Source: Octopus bimaculoides
Taxonomy: Eukaryota
DNA: 63,440 bases
NCBI RefSeq assembly: GCF_001194135.2
Contig: NC_069005.1
Location: 19,728,257-19,791,696, forward strand
Direction: 5' to 3'
Below the pieces are notes generated by a model. That model worked only from the letters and a program-made list of their open reading frames with translations, was not told the DNA's origin and ran no database searches. This document shows, in pieces, positions 22,719 to 25,352 of the stretch. Each line of letters opens with the position of its first letter. Within the stretch, counting starts at the first letter, position 1. The translations under genes were made by a program, and so were the position numbers.

Positions 22719-23280
22719 TTTTTGACTTAAAACAAATTTCTTTTTCCTGTTTGAATGGAAATTTTGAAAATGAAGTACTTACTTGACATTAATCATCAAG
22801 TTCATTTTTCCATGATTGTATGGGCTGGACAATTTGTCAAGGCAGAATTTTTATGGCCAGATCCCCTTTATGTCACTAATCCTCACCTATTACCAAATAA
22901 GGTAATATTTTTCCATGGCCAGACATGTCTCAATGGAAGATTGGAAATGGACACTGCTTGCATGATAGTGACACTCTTTTACTACTTTAGTGTGTCAACA
23001 TGGTTATGGGACCTCGTCGTATCACCACCACTGCTACTGTTACTACTACTAGTTCTTTCTTGTTAAATAAGTTAAATAATGTTGAAACTTTCTATGTCTT
23101 CTGTATTTCAACTCATGATGGCGGAACAAATCAAGATTCCACAGACAACATAATAGATACCTTTTATCTTTTTTTATGTTTCACTTGTTTCACTCATTAG
23201 ACTGCGGCCATGCAGGGGCACCACCTAAAAGGATTTTTAGTCAAATGAATTGACCCCAGGACTTATTTTTTTAAAACATG

Positions 23281-24113
23281 GGCTCTTTGTGATTTGACGG
23301 GCAACATTTTTTTATGTAGTGTTTTTGGTACCGAAACACTTTCAAACTTCGAATACTTGTATATTTTGTGGTATAGAACAGATAAAAAATTTTGTATTCG
23401 AAGTTATTTCATGTAAAAAATTGTCGTATTTTGGTAATTTCAACCAATCACAAGACGTCTATTGAGGTGAAAACAATTATGCCGTGGAATATAAACAACG
23501 GTGTTACGGGATTTTTTCCCTTGAATAAAATTAGTGCCGTTGTTTGTCAACAAAAACTATCCGTTGTCAACAACAACTATCAGTGGTATATTTTTCGTTT
23601 GTTACTGTTATTTATGACATCGTTCGTGCGTTTGTACTGGTTTTAGCTTTAGGGTTTTAGGGTTAGGGTTCGGGTTTTAGAGTTAGGGTTAGTTTTAGGA
23701 TTACGGTTAGGGTTATGATTATTTTTGCCATAACCTTAACTCTAACCCTATAACTCATAACCATAACCCTAACCCTAACCCTAACCCCAACCCTAACCCT
23801 AAAACCCTAACCCTAAAACCCAAACCCTAACCATAGAACCTTAAACCCTTACTAGGGAATAATGATATAATTAAACAGGGAATAACACACTTGACATCGA
23901 ACAGCAGTAACTGTATTCAGCTGAATAGACGTCAGTGATTGGTTGAAATTACAGAAATACAACAACTTTAACATGAAATAACTTGCGATGTACAATTTTT
24001 TGTTAAGAAGGTTAAGAGAAGAAGTTGTTTTATATGACACATTCTACCAGTGTCCCAAATTTGAAAGTGTTTCGTTAAGAAAACAAGTGTTGCCTGTCAA
24101 ATCACAAAGATCC
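23281..24113. mobile_element. Foldback/MITE-like DNA element with ~200-bp TIRs, 8-bp TSD and central inverted telomere-like arrays
   Basis: ggctctttgtgatttgacgggcaaca vs reverse complement ggatctttgtgatttgacaggcaaca; further inverted matches to ~23485/23913; AAAACATG at 23273-23280 and 24114-24121; splits a family A SINE. Confidence 0.9.
23643..23850. repeat. Degenerate (TTAGGG)n followed by (CCCTAA)n, head-to-head
   Basis: G-rich array ~23643-23716; C-rich array ~23731-23850. Confidence 0.9.
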
Positions 24114-25352
24114 AAAACATGTACTTATTCTAACAGTAGCTTTGTTGAACTGCTAAGTTACAGGATGTAAACAAACCAGCATTGGTTGTCAAGTGGTGGT
24201 GGGGGACAAATACAATGGCACACATAGTTCAAAACAATGTGAATAGATAAGCATTACATTTGATGGAGTAATCCGAAGGATGAAAGGTTGAACCAGCTGT
24301 TGGGTTAAATCTACCTCTTAAGGAAACCTTGGTAAATAATGTATGTATTCCACCCAAGGGTCAAATATTTCTTCGCCAGTTCACCCAAGACTGATACTTT
24401 ATTAACACTGGAAGGATAAAGAATAAAGTTGACCTTGGTAGGATTTGAACTCAGAACTCAAGCTAATGAAATAAACATGGCATTGCATTTCTTCTGCTCA
24501 CTTCACTATGCATCTGCCTTGTCCCTTCATTTTTATCAATCTGTGTCTATATCTTTGTGATGCCTTGTATGGTAGTCTATGTTACCTTAATACTTTGGTG
24601 GATGGAGTTNNNNNNNNNNNNNNNNNNNNNNNNNNNNNNNNNNNNNNNNNNNNNNNNNNNNNNNNNNNNNNNNNNNNNNNNNNNNNNNNNNNNNNNNNNN
24701 NNNNNNNNNNNNNNNNNNNNNNNNNNNNNNNNNNNNNNNNNNNNNNNNNNNNNNNNNNNNNNNNNNNNNNNNNNNNNNNNNNNNNNNNNNNNNNNNNNNN
24801 NNNNNNNNNNNNNNNNNNNNNNNNNNNNNNNNNNNNNNNNNNNNNNNNNNNNNNNNNNNNNNNNNNNNNNNNNNNNNNNNNNNNNNNNNNNNNNNNNNNN
24901 NNNNNNNNNNNNNNNNNNNNNNNNNNNNNNNNNNNNNNNNNNNNNNNNNNNNNNNNNNNNNNNNNNNNNNNNNNNNNNNNNNNNNNNNNNNNNNNNNNNN
25001 NNNNNNNNNNNNNNNNNNNNNNNNNNNNNNNNNNNNNNNNNNNNNNNNNNNNNNNNNNNNNNNNNNNNNNNNNNNNNNNNNNNNNNNNNNNNNNNNNNNN
25101 NNNNNNNNNNNNNNNNNNNNNNNNNNNNNNNNNNNNNNNNNNNNNNNNNNNNNNNNNNNNNNNNNNNNNNNNNNNNNNNNNNNNNNNNNNNNNNNNNNNN
25201 NNNNNNNNNNNNNNNNNNNNNNNNNNNNNNNNNNNNNNNNNNNNNNNNNNNNNNNNNNNNNNNNNNNNNNNNNNNNNNNNNNNNNNNNNNNNNNNNNNNN
25301 NNNNNNNNNNNNNNNNNNNNNNNNNNNNNNNNNNNNNNNNNNNNNNNNNNNN

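What the first reader, a model, noticed from the sequence alone, without database searches (positions are those of the whole stretch)
23273..24121. Foldback element carrying head-to-head telomeric arrays, with a perfect 8-bp TSD
An 833-bp unit: ~200-bp imperfect inverted arms starting GG, then (TTAGGG)n facing (CCCTAA)n at the centre. This mimics a telomere-telomere fusion scar. However, AAAACATG is duplicated at both ends and the unit splits a SINE whose halves rejoin (…ggacttatttttttt-aaaacatg-tacttattc…), so it arrived by transposition. 8-bp TSDs with GG termini fit Merlin-, MULE- or hAT/P-like transposases. Such an element would spread interstitial telomere-like and G-rich sites that can fold back into a long hairpin.
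Basis: partly seen in the sequence, partly recalled or inferred. Interest (0 to 1): 0.8.

Follow-up and report, generated by a model that had tools for sequence, protein, structure and literature searches.

The report
Octopus transposon carrying facing telomere repeats
This is a real, multi-copy, non-coding "jumping gene" in an octopus genome. Its centre holds two arrays of the telomere motif pointing at each other, so transposition can scatter sequences that look like scars of chromosome fusion.

Summary
Window 23281-24113 is an 833-bp near-palindrome with these parts:
- 26-nt inverted termini that start with GG
- about 200-nt imperfect inverted arms
- a degenerate (TTAGGG)n array facing a (CCCTAA)n array at the centre
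- an exact 8-bp target-site duplication, AAAACATG

It splits a SINE. The rejoined halves, with one AAAACATG, align without a gap to seven other SINE copies in the window.

It is not single-copy. An Octopus bimaculoides contig (L001:5575-6284) holds a second full copy, 95.5% identical, at an unrelated site. That copy has its own perfect 8-bp duplication (TAACGTTG) and the same G-strand array, variant for variant. A truncated copy lies at L001:4503-4602, and an arm fragment lies in O. sinensis (L006). The telomere-like core is therefore inherited cargo of a transposon family, not a fusion scar.

GG termini with exactly 8-bp duplications are the Merlin signature. Two octopus Merlin families characterised here show the same signature. 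Their terminal sequences differ from this element's, so no autonomous partner was found.

Verdict: a real foldback-type, Merlin-like non-autonomous transposon with unusual cargo. It is a new variant of a known kind and of moderate interest. Genome-wide copy number and prior cataloguing in Repbase or Dfam could not be checked.

The parts
23163..23272 (+). 5' part of the host SINE copy, up to the duplicated 8-mer
   Evidence: Aligns to seven other SINE copies in the window at 69-77% identity (49146-48942, 21702-21882, 15231-15072 and others). The same SINE family occurs in O. sinensis and O. vulgaris loci.
23273..23280 (.). Left copy of the 8-bp target-site duplication, AAAACATG
   Evidence: Read directly. 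It corresponds to the single AAGYCTGG-type octamer in uninterrupted SINE copies.
23281..23306 (+). Left terminal inverted repeat, GGCTCTTTGTGATTTGACGGGCAACA
   Evidence: Identity with the L001 copy starts exactly at the first G.
23281..23479 (+). Left arm, the part that pairs with the right arm
   Evidence: Inverted-repeat pairs I3, I7, I8, I10 and I16. 79% identity to the reverse-complemented right arm over 201 columns.
23480..23638 (+). Segment specific to the left arm. It includes a 20-nt direct repeat, TTGTCAACAA(A/C)AACTATC(C/A)G x2, at 23544-23583.
   Evidence: The L001 copy lacks 11 and 33 nt here.
23639..23722 (+). Degenerate telomere-motif array, G strand (TTAGGG-like, about 14 units, period about 20 nt)
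   Evidence: Identical to the L001 copy apart from one base, including every degenerate variant.
23723..23730 (.). Central spacer, the loop of the foldback (approximate)
   Evidence: Hairpin loop in the predicted DNA fold. It lies between the two arrays.
23731..23850 (+). Degenerate telomere-motif array, C strand (CCCTAA-like, about 16-20 units), facing the G array
   Evidence: The L001 copy is 6 + 72 nt shorter here.
23851..24113 (+). Right arm. The part from 23908 onward pairs with the left arm.
   Evidence: 97.3% identical over 263 nt to L001:6022-6284.
24088..24113 (-). Right terminal inverted repeat. On the - strand it reads GGATCTTTGTGATTTGACAGGCAACA.
   Evidence: Identity with the L001 copy ends exactly at the last C.
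24114..24121 (.). Right copy of the 8-bp target-site duplication, AAAACATG
24122..24226 (+). Continuation of the host SINE copy
   Evidence: The rejoined flanks align contiguously across the junction to other SINE copies.

Best explanation
The 833-bp unit is one copy of a non-autonomous, foldback-type DNA transposon family of Octopus. The window is most likely from O. bimaculoides.

Mobilisation. The element has no coding capacity and must be moved in trans by a DDE transposase. That enzyme would bind the 26-nt GG-terminated inverted termini, and probably the subterminal arms. It would excise the element and reinsert it at a cut staggered by 8 bp, whose repair produces the 8-bp duplication. 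Here the element landed in a SINE. The superfamily is most likely Merlin (IS1595-like DDE transposase), at about 0.6 on its own.

The core. The head-to-head telomere-motif arrays are an inherited internal part of the element, effectively the innermost part of its long inverted repeat. They are copied wherever it transposes.

Shown here:
- insertion into a SINE
- exact 8-bp duplications at two unrelated sites
- element boundaries that coincide exactly in the two copies
- inheritance of the degenerate G-strand array
- Merlin elements in Octopus with the same GG + 8-bp signature

Inferred:
- which transposase moves it
- how the core arose

Likely origin of the core. (TTAGGG)n followed by (CCCTAA)n is the only orientation that 3'-end extension by telomerase at two facing broken ends can give. 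One route is a break or aborted gap repair inside an ancestral element, healed by telomerase on both ends and then joined. The other is a half-element capped by telomere repeats and then duplicated as a palindrome. Slippage would later have created the 20-nt periodicity and the length differences between copies.
For: Window copy:
- Anatomy of the element.
- The rejoined SINE flanks with one AAAACATG align without a gap to seven other SINE copies.

Second full copy, L001:5575-6284 (O. bimaculoides GCA_001194135.2, LGKD02092233.1):
- 95.5% identity over 708 ungapped columns.
- Perfect 26/26 termini, GGATCTTTGGGGTTTGACGGGCAACA.
- Perfect and different 8-bp duplication, TAACGTTG.
- Similarity to the window copy begins and ends exactly at GG...CC.
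- The G array is identical except for one base. The C array differs only by indels.
- It also folds end to end, at -168.6 kcal/mol.

Partial copies:
- L001:4503-4602 starts exactly at base 1 of the terminus (nhmmer E = 2e-13).
- L006:11945-12041 in O. sinensis is an arm fragment, 84.5% identical, E = 3e-19.

No coding capacity: no Pfam domain in the element's ORFs and no protein homologues.

Merlin signature:
- Published definition: termini of 24-462 bp with conserved terminal 5'-GG and 8- or 9-bp duplications (PMC8101967).
- O. bimaculoides has many DDE_Tnp_IS1595 proteins (P0004 matches PF12762 at E = 5e-17).
- Octopus Merlin elements delimited here all have GG termini and 8-bp duplications: L005:9577-11645 (AAACAAAG), and L002, L003 and L004 (GCAAATCT, GAAACTTT, CAAGGCTT).

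Telomere motif: TTAGGG is the only experimentally determined cephalopod telomere motif (PMC13218726).

Terminal positions 10 and 12 differ between the two copies but match at both ends within each copy. This fits a constraint for matched ends.
Against: - No transposase-encoding element with these termini was found. The two octopus Merlin families whose ends I could define have unrelated terminal sequences: GGCGATGTTTCG... and GGCAGTCATGCC....
- The Merlin gene next to the truncated copy in L001 ends in its own terminus at 4504, so that adjacency is not evidence of partnership.
- No Merlin remnant is present in the window (tblastn).
- Only two full copies, one truncated copy and one fragment were seen. 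No tool here could search an octopus genome by DNA, so the copy number is unknown.
- About 104 kb of O. sinensis and O. vulgaris sequence contained no full copy.
- The origin of the telomere-like core is inference only.
- The species of the window was not verified directly.
Confidence: 0.78

Rival explanations
1. It is the same kind of element (a non-autonomous transposon with terminal inverted repeats and a telomere-like core), but a non-Merlin transposase mobilises it. Superfamilies that make 8-bp duplications include hAT, P, Zisupton, Novosib and atypical MULEs.
For: No Merlin with matching termini was found. An 8-bp duplication is not unique to Merlin (established knowledge of superfamily hallmarks).
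Against: Both copies end in GG...CC. hAT termini follow YARNG and P termini start CA (established knowledge). MULE duplications are usually 9-10 bp, and here both are exactly 8. Merlin is abundant in this genus and, as far as seen, recently active, with an identical GG + 8-bp signature.
Confidence: 0.2
2. It is a relic of an ancestral telomere-to-telomere chromosome fusion, or of a sister-chromatid fusion, at this locus.
For: The arrays are head to head, (TTAGGG)n then (CCCTAA)n, the orientation of fusion-type interstitial telomeric sequences such as human 2q13 (PMC6800518).
Against: The unit is bounded by inverted termini and an exact 8-bp duplication, and it sits inside a SINE whose halves rejoin. 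The same unit, with the same degenerate array, occurs at an unrelated locus with a different duplication. The arrays total only about 200 nt.
Confidence: 0.01
3. Telomerase added the telomere-like arrays at this locus only, after insertion, during repair of a double-strand break. They would then not belong to the family.
For: Short interstitial telomeric sequences are thought to arise during break repair (PMC6800518).
Against: The G-strand array of the L001 copy matches the window copy variant for variant (TTTTAGCT, TTCGGG, TTAGAG, TTACGG...), with one substitution. Independent addition cannot produce that.
Confidence: 0.01
4. It is an assembly artefact, a chimeric or fold-back contig in a draft assembly.
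For: The window is a gapped draft scaffold with 19 N runs. Palindromes are prone to artefacts.
Against: The element lies inside a contiguous block, 496 bases from the nearest gap. The same architecture is present in an independently assembled contig (L001). The arms are only about 79% alike, so they are not a mirrored read.
Confidence: 0.01

Closest known systems
Merlin superfamily DNA transposons and their non-autonomous derivatives (Feschotte 2004; survey in PMC8101967)
   Same: Terminal 5'-GG, 8-bp target-site duplication, and terminal inverted repeats within the 24-462 bp range. The host genus is rich in DDE_Tnp_IS1595 genes. Octopus Merlin elements delimited here have the same signature and also produce short derivatives, such as the nested 472-bp element at L005:10778-11249.
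   Different: No transposase-bearing relative with the same terminal sequence was found. The internal head-to-head telomere-motif arrays are not a described Merlin feature, as far as my literature searches show.
Foldback (FB-type) elements: Drosophila FB, sea-urchin TU, plant foldback MITEs (from established knowledge)
   Same: Almost the whole element is a long imperfect inverted repeat with no coding capacity. The inner part of the arms is made of short tandem repeats whose number varies between copies. The single strand folds into one long hairpin.
   Different: Here the tandem repeat is the host's telomere motif. Drosophila FB belongs to the MuDR/Phantom group with 9-bp duplications, and Galileo belongs to P with 7 bp. 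Here the duplication is 8 bp with GG ends.
Fusion-type interstitial telomeric sequence (human 2q13; classes summarised in PMC6800518)
   Same: Head-to-head orientation, (TTAGGG)n then (CCCTAA)n, at an internal chromosomal site.
   Different: It is bounded by inverted termini and a target-site duplication, it is dispersed to more than one locus, it is very short and degenerate, and it has no subtelomeric flanks.
Telomere-bearing transposons of ciliates (TBE1, Tec; from established knowledge) and Arabidopsis ATREP18 (bioRxiv 10.1101/2020.11.28.402172)
   Same: Repeats annotated as transposable elements that contain telomere motifs.
   Different: TBE and Tec carry the telomere repeats at the outer tips of their inverted repeats, and they encode proteins. 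The authors say ATREP18 units are not transposable elements in the strict sense: they are tandem, on one strand, and lack transposon features. The octopus element is a true dispersed element with duplications, and its motif arrays are at the centre.

Membership tests
Merlin superfamily (non-autonomous member) | 8- or 9-bp target-site duplication | tested here: met
   AAAACATG in the window and TAACGTTG in L001. Both are exact and cannot be extended.
Merlin superfamily (non-autonomous member) | Conserved terminal 5'-GG-3' at both ends | tested here: met
   GGCTC.../GGATC... in the window and GGATC... at both ends in L001. Definition from PMC8101967.
Merlin superfamily (non-autonomous member) | Terminal inverted repeats of 24-462 bp | tested here: met
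   26-nt core (24/26 in the window, 26/26 in L001), extendable imperfectly to about 200 nt.
Merlin superfamily (non-autonomous member) | Termini shared with an element that encodes a DDE_Tnp_IS1595 transposase (autonomous partner) | tested here: inconclusive
   Six octopus loci with Merlin genes were fetched (L001-L006). The two families with definable ends have different termini. The L001 adjacency is a separate truncated copy. Most of the roughly 200 O. bimaculoides Merlin genes could not be fetched.
Merlin superfamily (non-autonomous member) | Merlin transposases present in the host genome | tested here: met
   P0004 is an O. bimaculoides protein matching PF12762. About 200 octopus entries appear in the supplement of PMC8101967. 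An 8.7-kb family is 99.6% identical between loci.
Foldback / MITE-type non-autonomous element | No coding capacity; the body is a long inverted repeat that can form a hairpin | tested here: met
   No Pfam hit or homologue for the internal ORFs. DNA fold z = -16.5. The L001 copy folds at -168.6 kcal/mol.
Foldback / MITE-type non-autonomous element | Multiple dispersed copies, each with its own target-site duplication | tested here: met
   Two full copies with different duplications and unrelated flanks, one truncated copy, and one fragment in a second species. The genome-wide number is not measurable here.
Fusion-type interstitial telomeric sequence | Head-to-head telomere arrays | tested here: met
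Fusion-type interstitial telomeric sequence | A unique locus formed by joining two chromosome ends, with no transposon boundaries | tested here: not met
   Inverted termini, an 8-bp duplication, a rejoining SINE and a second locus.
hAT superfamily | 8-bp duplication with termini that begin YARNG | tested here: not met
   The duplication length fits, but the termini begin GGMTC in all four ends. The motif definition comes from established knowledge.
Ciliate telomere-bearing elements (TBE/Tec) | Telomere repeats at the outer tips of the inverted repeats; protein-coding | tested here: not met
   The arrays are central and the element is non-coding.

The most novel reading that the evidence does not exclude
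The palindromic telomere-motif core may be more than passive cargo. The family may descend from a transposon break healed by telomerase on both ends. Its copies could then act as dispersed binding sites for telomere proteins, or as hairpin or G-rich fragile sites. Such sites could seed new telomeres, breakage and healing, or telomeric small RNAs, and so contribute to the extensive rearrangement of octopus genomes. They would also mimic fusion scars in comparative genomics.
Probability: 0.1. Interest if true: 0.75.

Novelty: new variant of a known kind. Interest (0 to 1): 0.5.

Why it matters
Head-to-head telomere repeats inside chromosomes are normally read as footprints of ancestral chromosome fusions. 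Only one is accepted in the human genome and none was found in C. elegans (PMC6800518).

Here such a structure is carried inside a mobile element and pasted at unrelated sites. This gives a concrete mechanism for the origin and spread of interstitial telomere-like sequences, whose abundance on metazoan chromosome arms one review calls a mystery (PMC9071541). It also warns against inferring fusions from short head-to-head arrays in cephalopod assemblies.

If the family is abundant, it offers a natural set of dispersed telomere-motif hairpins. These could be used to test telomere-protein binding, fragility and small-RNA production in an animal with a heavily rearranged genome.

As a transposon it is otherwise ordinary: a Merlin-like foldback MITE.

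Tried and rejected
1. Other copies in the window. The terminus pattern with up to 3 mismatches, BLAST of the whole element, and an nhmmer profile found only the one copy.
2. Public collections. Scans with the terminus and with a conserved arm motif gave 0 hits in the metagenome contigs (two scans). The terminus pattern alone gave 0 hits in the viral contigs (one scan). These collections do not hold octopus genomes, so the result says nothing.
3. Spurious-ORF trick. The 84-aa ORF of the left arm found no homologue in the protein database. Exact look-ups of four window ORFs (84, 191, 103 and 62 aa) found no record. Orthologous empty sites could therefore not be retrieved.
4. A retracted reading. 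I first took L001:4505-4602, just downstream of a Merlin transposase gene, for that Merlin's own right end, which would have made it an autonomous partner. Comparison with the complete, duplication-bounded Merlin in L005 shows that the L001 Merlin ends at 4504 in its own terminus. The fragment is a separate truncated copy.
5. Sensitive local alignment found no left terminus of the family upstream of the Merlin genes in L001, L005 or L006.
6. Five further loci from ENA assemblies that carry Merlin genes (L007-L011) had no octopus SINE, no element and no telomere arrays, so they come from other organisms.
7. Rfam and tRNA scans of the window found nothing.
8. Five literature searches and the O. 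vulgaris repeat-annotation paper turned up no description of a transposon with head-to-head telomere arrays. Repbase and Dfam could not be queried.
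Full report
**Observation.**
- An 833-bp unit (23281-24113) begins GGCTCTTTGTGATTTGACGGGCAACA. It ends with the reverse complement of GGATCTTTGTGATTTGACAGGCAACA.
- These two 26-mers are the only matches in the window, against 0.00 expected from shuffles.
- Inverted similarity continues inward for about 200 nt. BLAST gives 67.7% over 220 columns at E = 1.5e-20. Identity over 201 ungapped columns is 79%.
- The centre holds a degenerate TTAGGG-type array (23639-23722) facing a CCCTAA-type array (23731-23850).
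- All 12 window matches to TTAGGGTTAGGG (up to 1 mismatch) lie there, against 0.19 expected. Four are on the + strand and eight follow on the - strand.
- The arrays are far from perfect. There are 5 and 8 perfect hexamers, 72-77% matches to a 6-nt period, and an alternative period of about 20 nt.
- As single-stranded DNA the unit folds end to end at -177.8 kcal/mol, z = -16.5.
- AAAACATG flanks it on both sides (23273-23280 and 24114-24121) and cannot be extended or shifted.

**Context and proof of insertion.** The window is a gapped draft scaffold of a eukaryote with 19 N runs. The element lies inside a contiguous 7.6-kb block.
- I joined the left flank, one AAAACATG and the right flank. The result aligns contiguously across the junction to seven other copies of one SINE family in the window.
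- Those copies carry a single AAGYCTGG-type octamer where this one has AAAACATG.
- The element therefore inserted into a pre-existing SINE and duplicated 8 bp.
- The same SINE family occurs in O. sinensis and O. vulgaris loci at about 75% identity. The window is therefore from an octopus.
- TTAGGG is the only experimentally determined cephalopod telomere motif (PMC13218726).

**It is a family.** No tool here can search an octopus genome by DNA, so I went through proteins.
- The supplement of a Merlin survey (PMC8101967) lists about 200 O. bimaculoides proteins with the DDE_Tnp_IS1595 domain.
- One of them served as a query and led to P0004 (LOC106883699) and its 8-kb contig, L001.
- L001 holds a second full copy at 5575-6284 (710 bp). 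Its arms are 90% and 97% identical to the window copy, and it is 95.5% identical overall across 708 ungapped columns.
- Its two termini are identical to each other, GGATCTTTGGGGTTTGACGGGCAACA.
- It is flanked by a perfect but different 8-bp duplication, TAACGTTG. Its flanks are unrelated to the window's.
- Similarity between the two copies starts and stops exactly at GG...CC.
- A truncated copy lies at L001:4503-4602 and begins exactly at base 1 of the terminus (nhmmer E = 2e-13).
- A fragment of about 100-130 nt, 84.5% identical to the right arm, lies in O. sinensis at L006:11945-12041.
- Finding a full copy and a partial copy in one arbitrary 8-kb contig suggests the family is abundant in O. 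bimaculoides. The sample is too small and too biased to put a number on it.

**The telomere-like core is inherited.** The G-strand array of the L001 copy matches the window copy variant for variant, with one substitution. The C-strand array differs only by 6-nt and 72-nt indels.
- Independent telomerase addition, or independent fusions, cannot give that pattern. The core belongs to the element.
- Length variation confined to the tandem arrays and to a 20-nt direct repeat in the left arm is what slippage would produce.
- Terminal positions 10 and 12 differ between the copies but are the same at both ends within each copy. This points to a constraint, or to conversion, that keeps the two ends matched.

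**Which transposase.** The element has no coding capacity. Its hallmarks are exactly 8-bp duplications and terminal 5'-GG, which is the published Merlin signature (PMC8101967).
- I delimited two octopus Merlin families from the fetched loci.
- Family B (L005:9577-11645, transposase P0016) has termini GGAACAGTCATGCC.../GGCAGTCATGCC... and the duplication AAACAAAG.
- Family A (transposase P0077) is 8.7 kb long with inverted repeats of about 350 bp, GGCGATGTTTCG.../GGCATAGTTTCGG.... It is 99.6% identical between loci. Its three duplications are GCAAATCT, CAAGGCTT and GAAACTTT.
- Merlins in this genus are therefore numerous and, as far as seen, recently active. They make the same GG + 8-bp footprint.
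- Their terminal sequences are unrelated to this element's, so the autonomous partner was not found.
- hAT termini (YARNG) and P termini (CA...) do not fit, and MULE duplications are usually longer. I put Merlin at about 0.6.

**A reading I withdrew.** I first took the L001 fragment just downstream of the Merlin gene for that Merlin's own end. Comparison with the complete L005 element shows that the L001 Merlin ends at 4504 in its own terminus. The fragment is a separate truncated copy abutting it, possibly one that the Merlin inserted into.

**Mechanism and origin (inferred).**
- Mobilisation is by trans-acting cut-and-paste transposition with an 8-bp staggered target cut.
- For the core, (TTAGGG)n followed by (CCCTAA)n is the only order that 3'-end extension by telomerase at two facing broken ends can produce.
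- The most economical origin is therefore a break or aborted gap repair inside an ancestral element, healed on both ends and rejoined.
- The alternative is palindromic duplication of a half-element capped by telomere repeats.
- Either way, the event happened once, in an ancestor of both copies.

**Rivals.**
- A fusion scar, addition by telomerase at this locus only, and an assembly artefact are each excluded by the second copy, the rejoining SINE and the shared degenerate array.
- The live rival is a different superfamily.

**Comparison and novelty.**
- It works like a foldback MITE, and it passes every Merlin membership test that could be run except the shared-terminus partner test, which is inconclusive.
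- Literature searches found no description of a transposon with head-to-head telomere arrays.
- Arabidopsis ATREP18, which is rich in telomere motifs, is not a true transposable element according to its authors.
- Ciliate TBE and Tec elements carry telomere repeats at their tips, not their centre (established knowledge).
- I rate it a new variant of a known kind. Repbase and Dfam could not be checked.
- Interest is moderate. The transposon biology is ordinary. A mobile look-alike of a fusion scar is a useful and slightly surprising source of interstitial telomeric sequence.

Noticed in passing
L005:7395-7495 (O. sinensis VCDQ01004827.1): A lone degenerate TTAGGG-like array with the G strand on +. 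It has the same TTTTAGAG/TTTTAGGG variants and roughly 20-nt period as the element's core, but no arms or termini of the family beside it. It lies about 2 kb upstream of a Merlin element.
   Followed up: partly
L002:4266-12986, L004:4253-12988, L003:3888-12937: An 8.7-kb Merlin family (transposase P0077) with inverted repeats of about 350 bp. It is 99.6% identical between two O. sinensis loci and is also present in O. vulgaris, each time with a different 8-bp duplication, so it looks recently active. Only about 0.9 kb is the transposase gene. The other roughly 8 kb was not examined.
   Followed up: partly
L005:9577-11645: A complete, duplication-bounded (AAACAAAG) Merlin of a second family. 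Its transposase gene is interrupted by a nested 472-bp MITE of the first family at 10778-11249, with the duplication CAAAAGAG/CAGAAGAG.
   Followed up: yes
window 23290, 23292, 24102, 24104 and the matching positions in L001: Terminal positions 10 and 12 are T and A at both ends of the window copy, and G and G at both ends of the L001 copy. The change is concerted between the two ends of each copy.
   Followed up: partly
window 23440-23460 and 23925-23945: CCAATCAC lies next to GACGTC (CCAAT-box-like and CRE-like motifs), mirrored in both arms. TGACGTCA-type motifs also sit in the subterminal regions of the L005 Merlin. This may be a binding site or a promoter. It was not tested.
   Followed up: no
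window 26331-27394 (- strand): A mariner-type transposase pseudogene, split into at least two ORFs that match Transposase_1/DDE_3 and HTH_48.
   Followed up: partly
window 42019-42702; 17702-17977; 59777-60277: A reverse-transcriptase fragment with a weak RVT_1 match, and two ORFs that look like pieces of a LINE but have no Pfam hit.
   Followed up: partly
window, 19 N runs (for example 4787-5261, 10794-11654, 46166-47106): Several assembly gaps are bordered by (CA)n, (TA)n or (GA)n microsatellites, which suggests the gaps are unassembled simple repeats.
   Followed up: no
L001:1374-1988: Another imperfect palindrome of about 615 bp, 73% self-complementary, without GG termini. Foldback-like structures seem common in this genome.
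   Followed up: no
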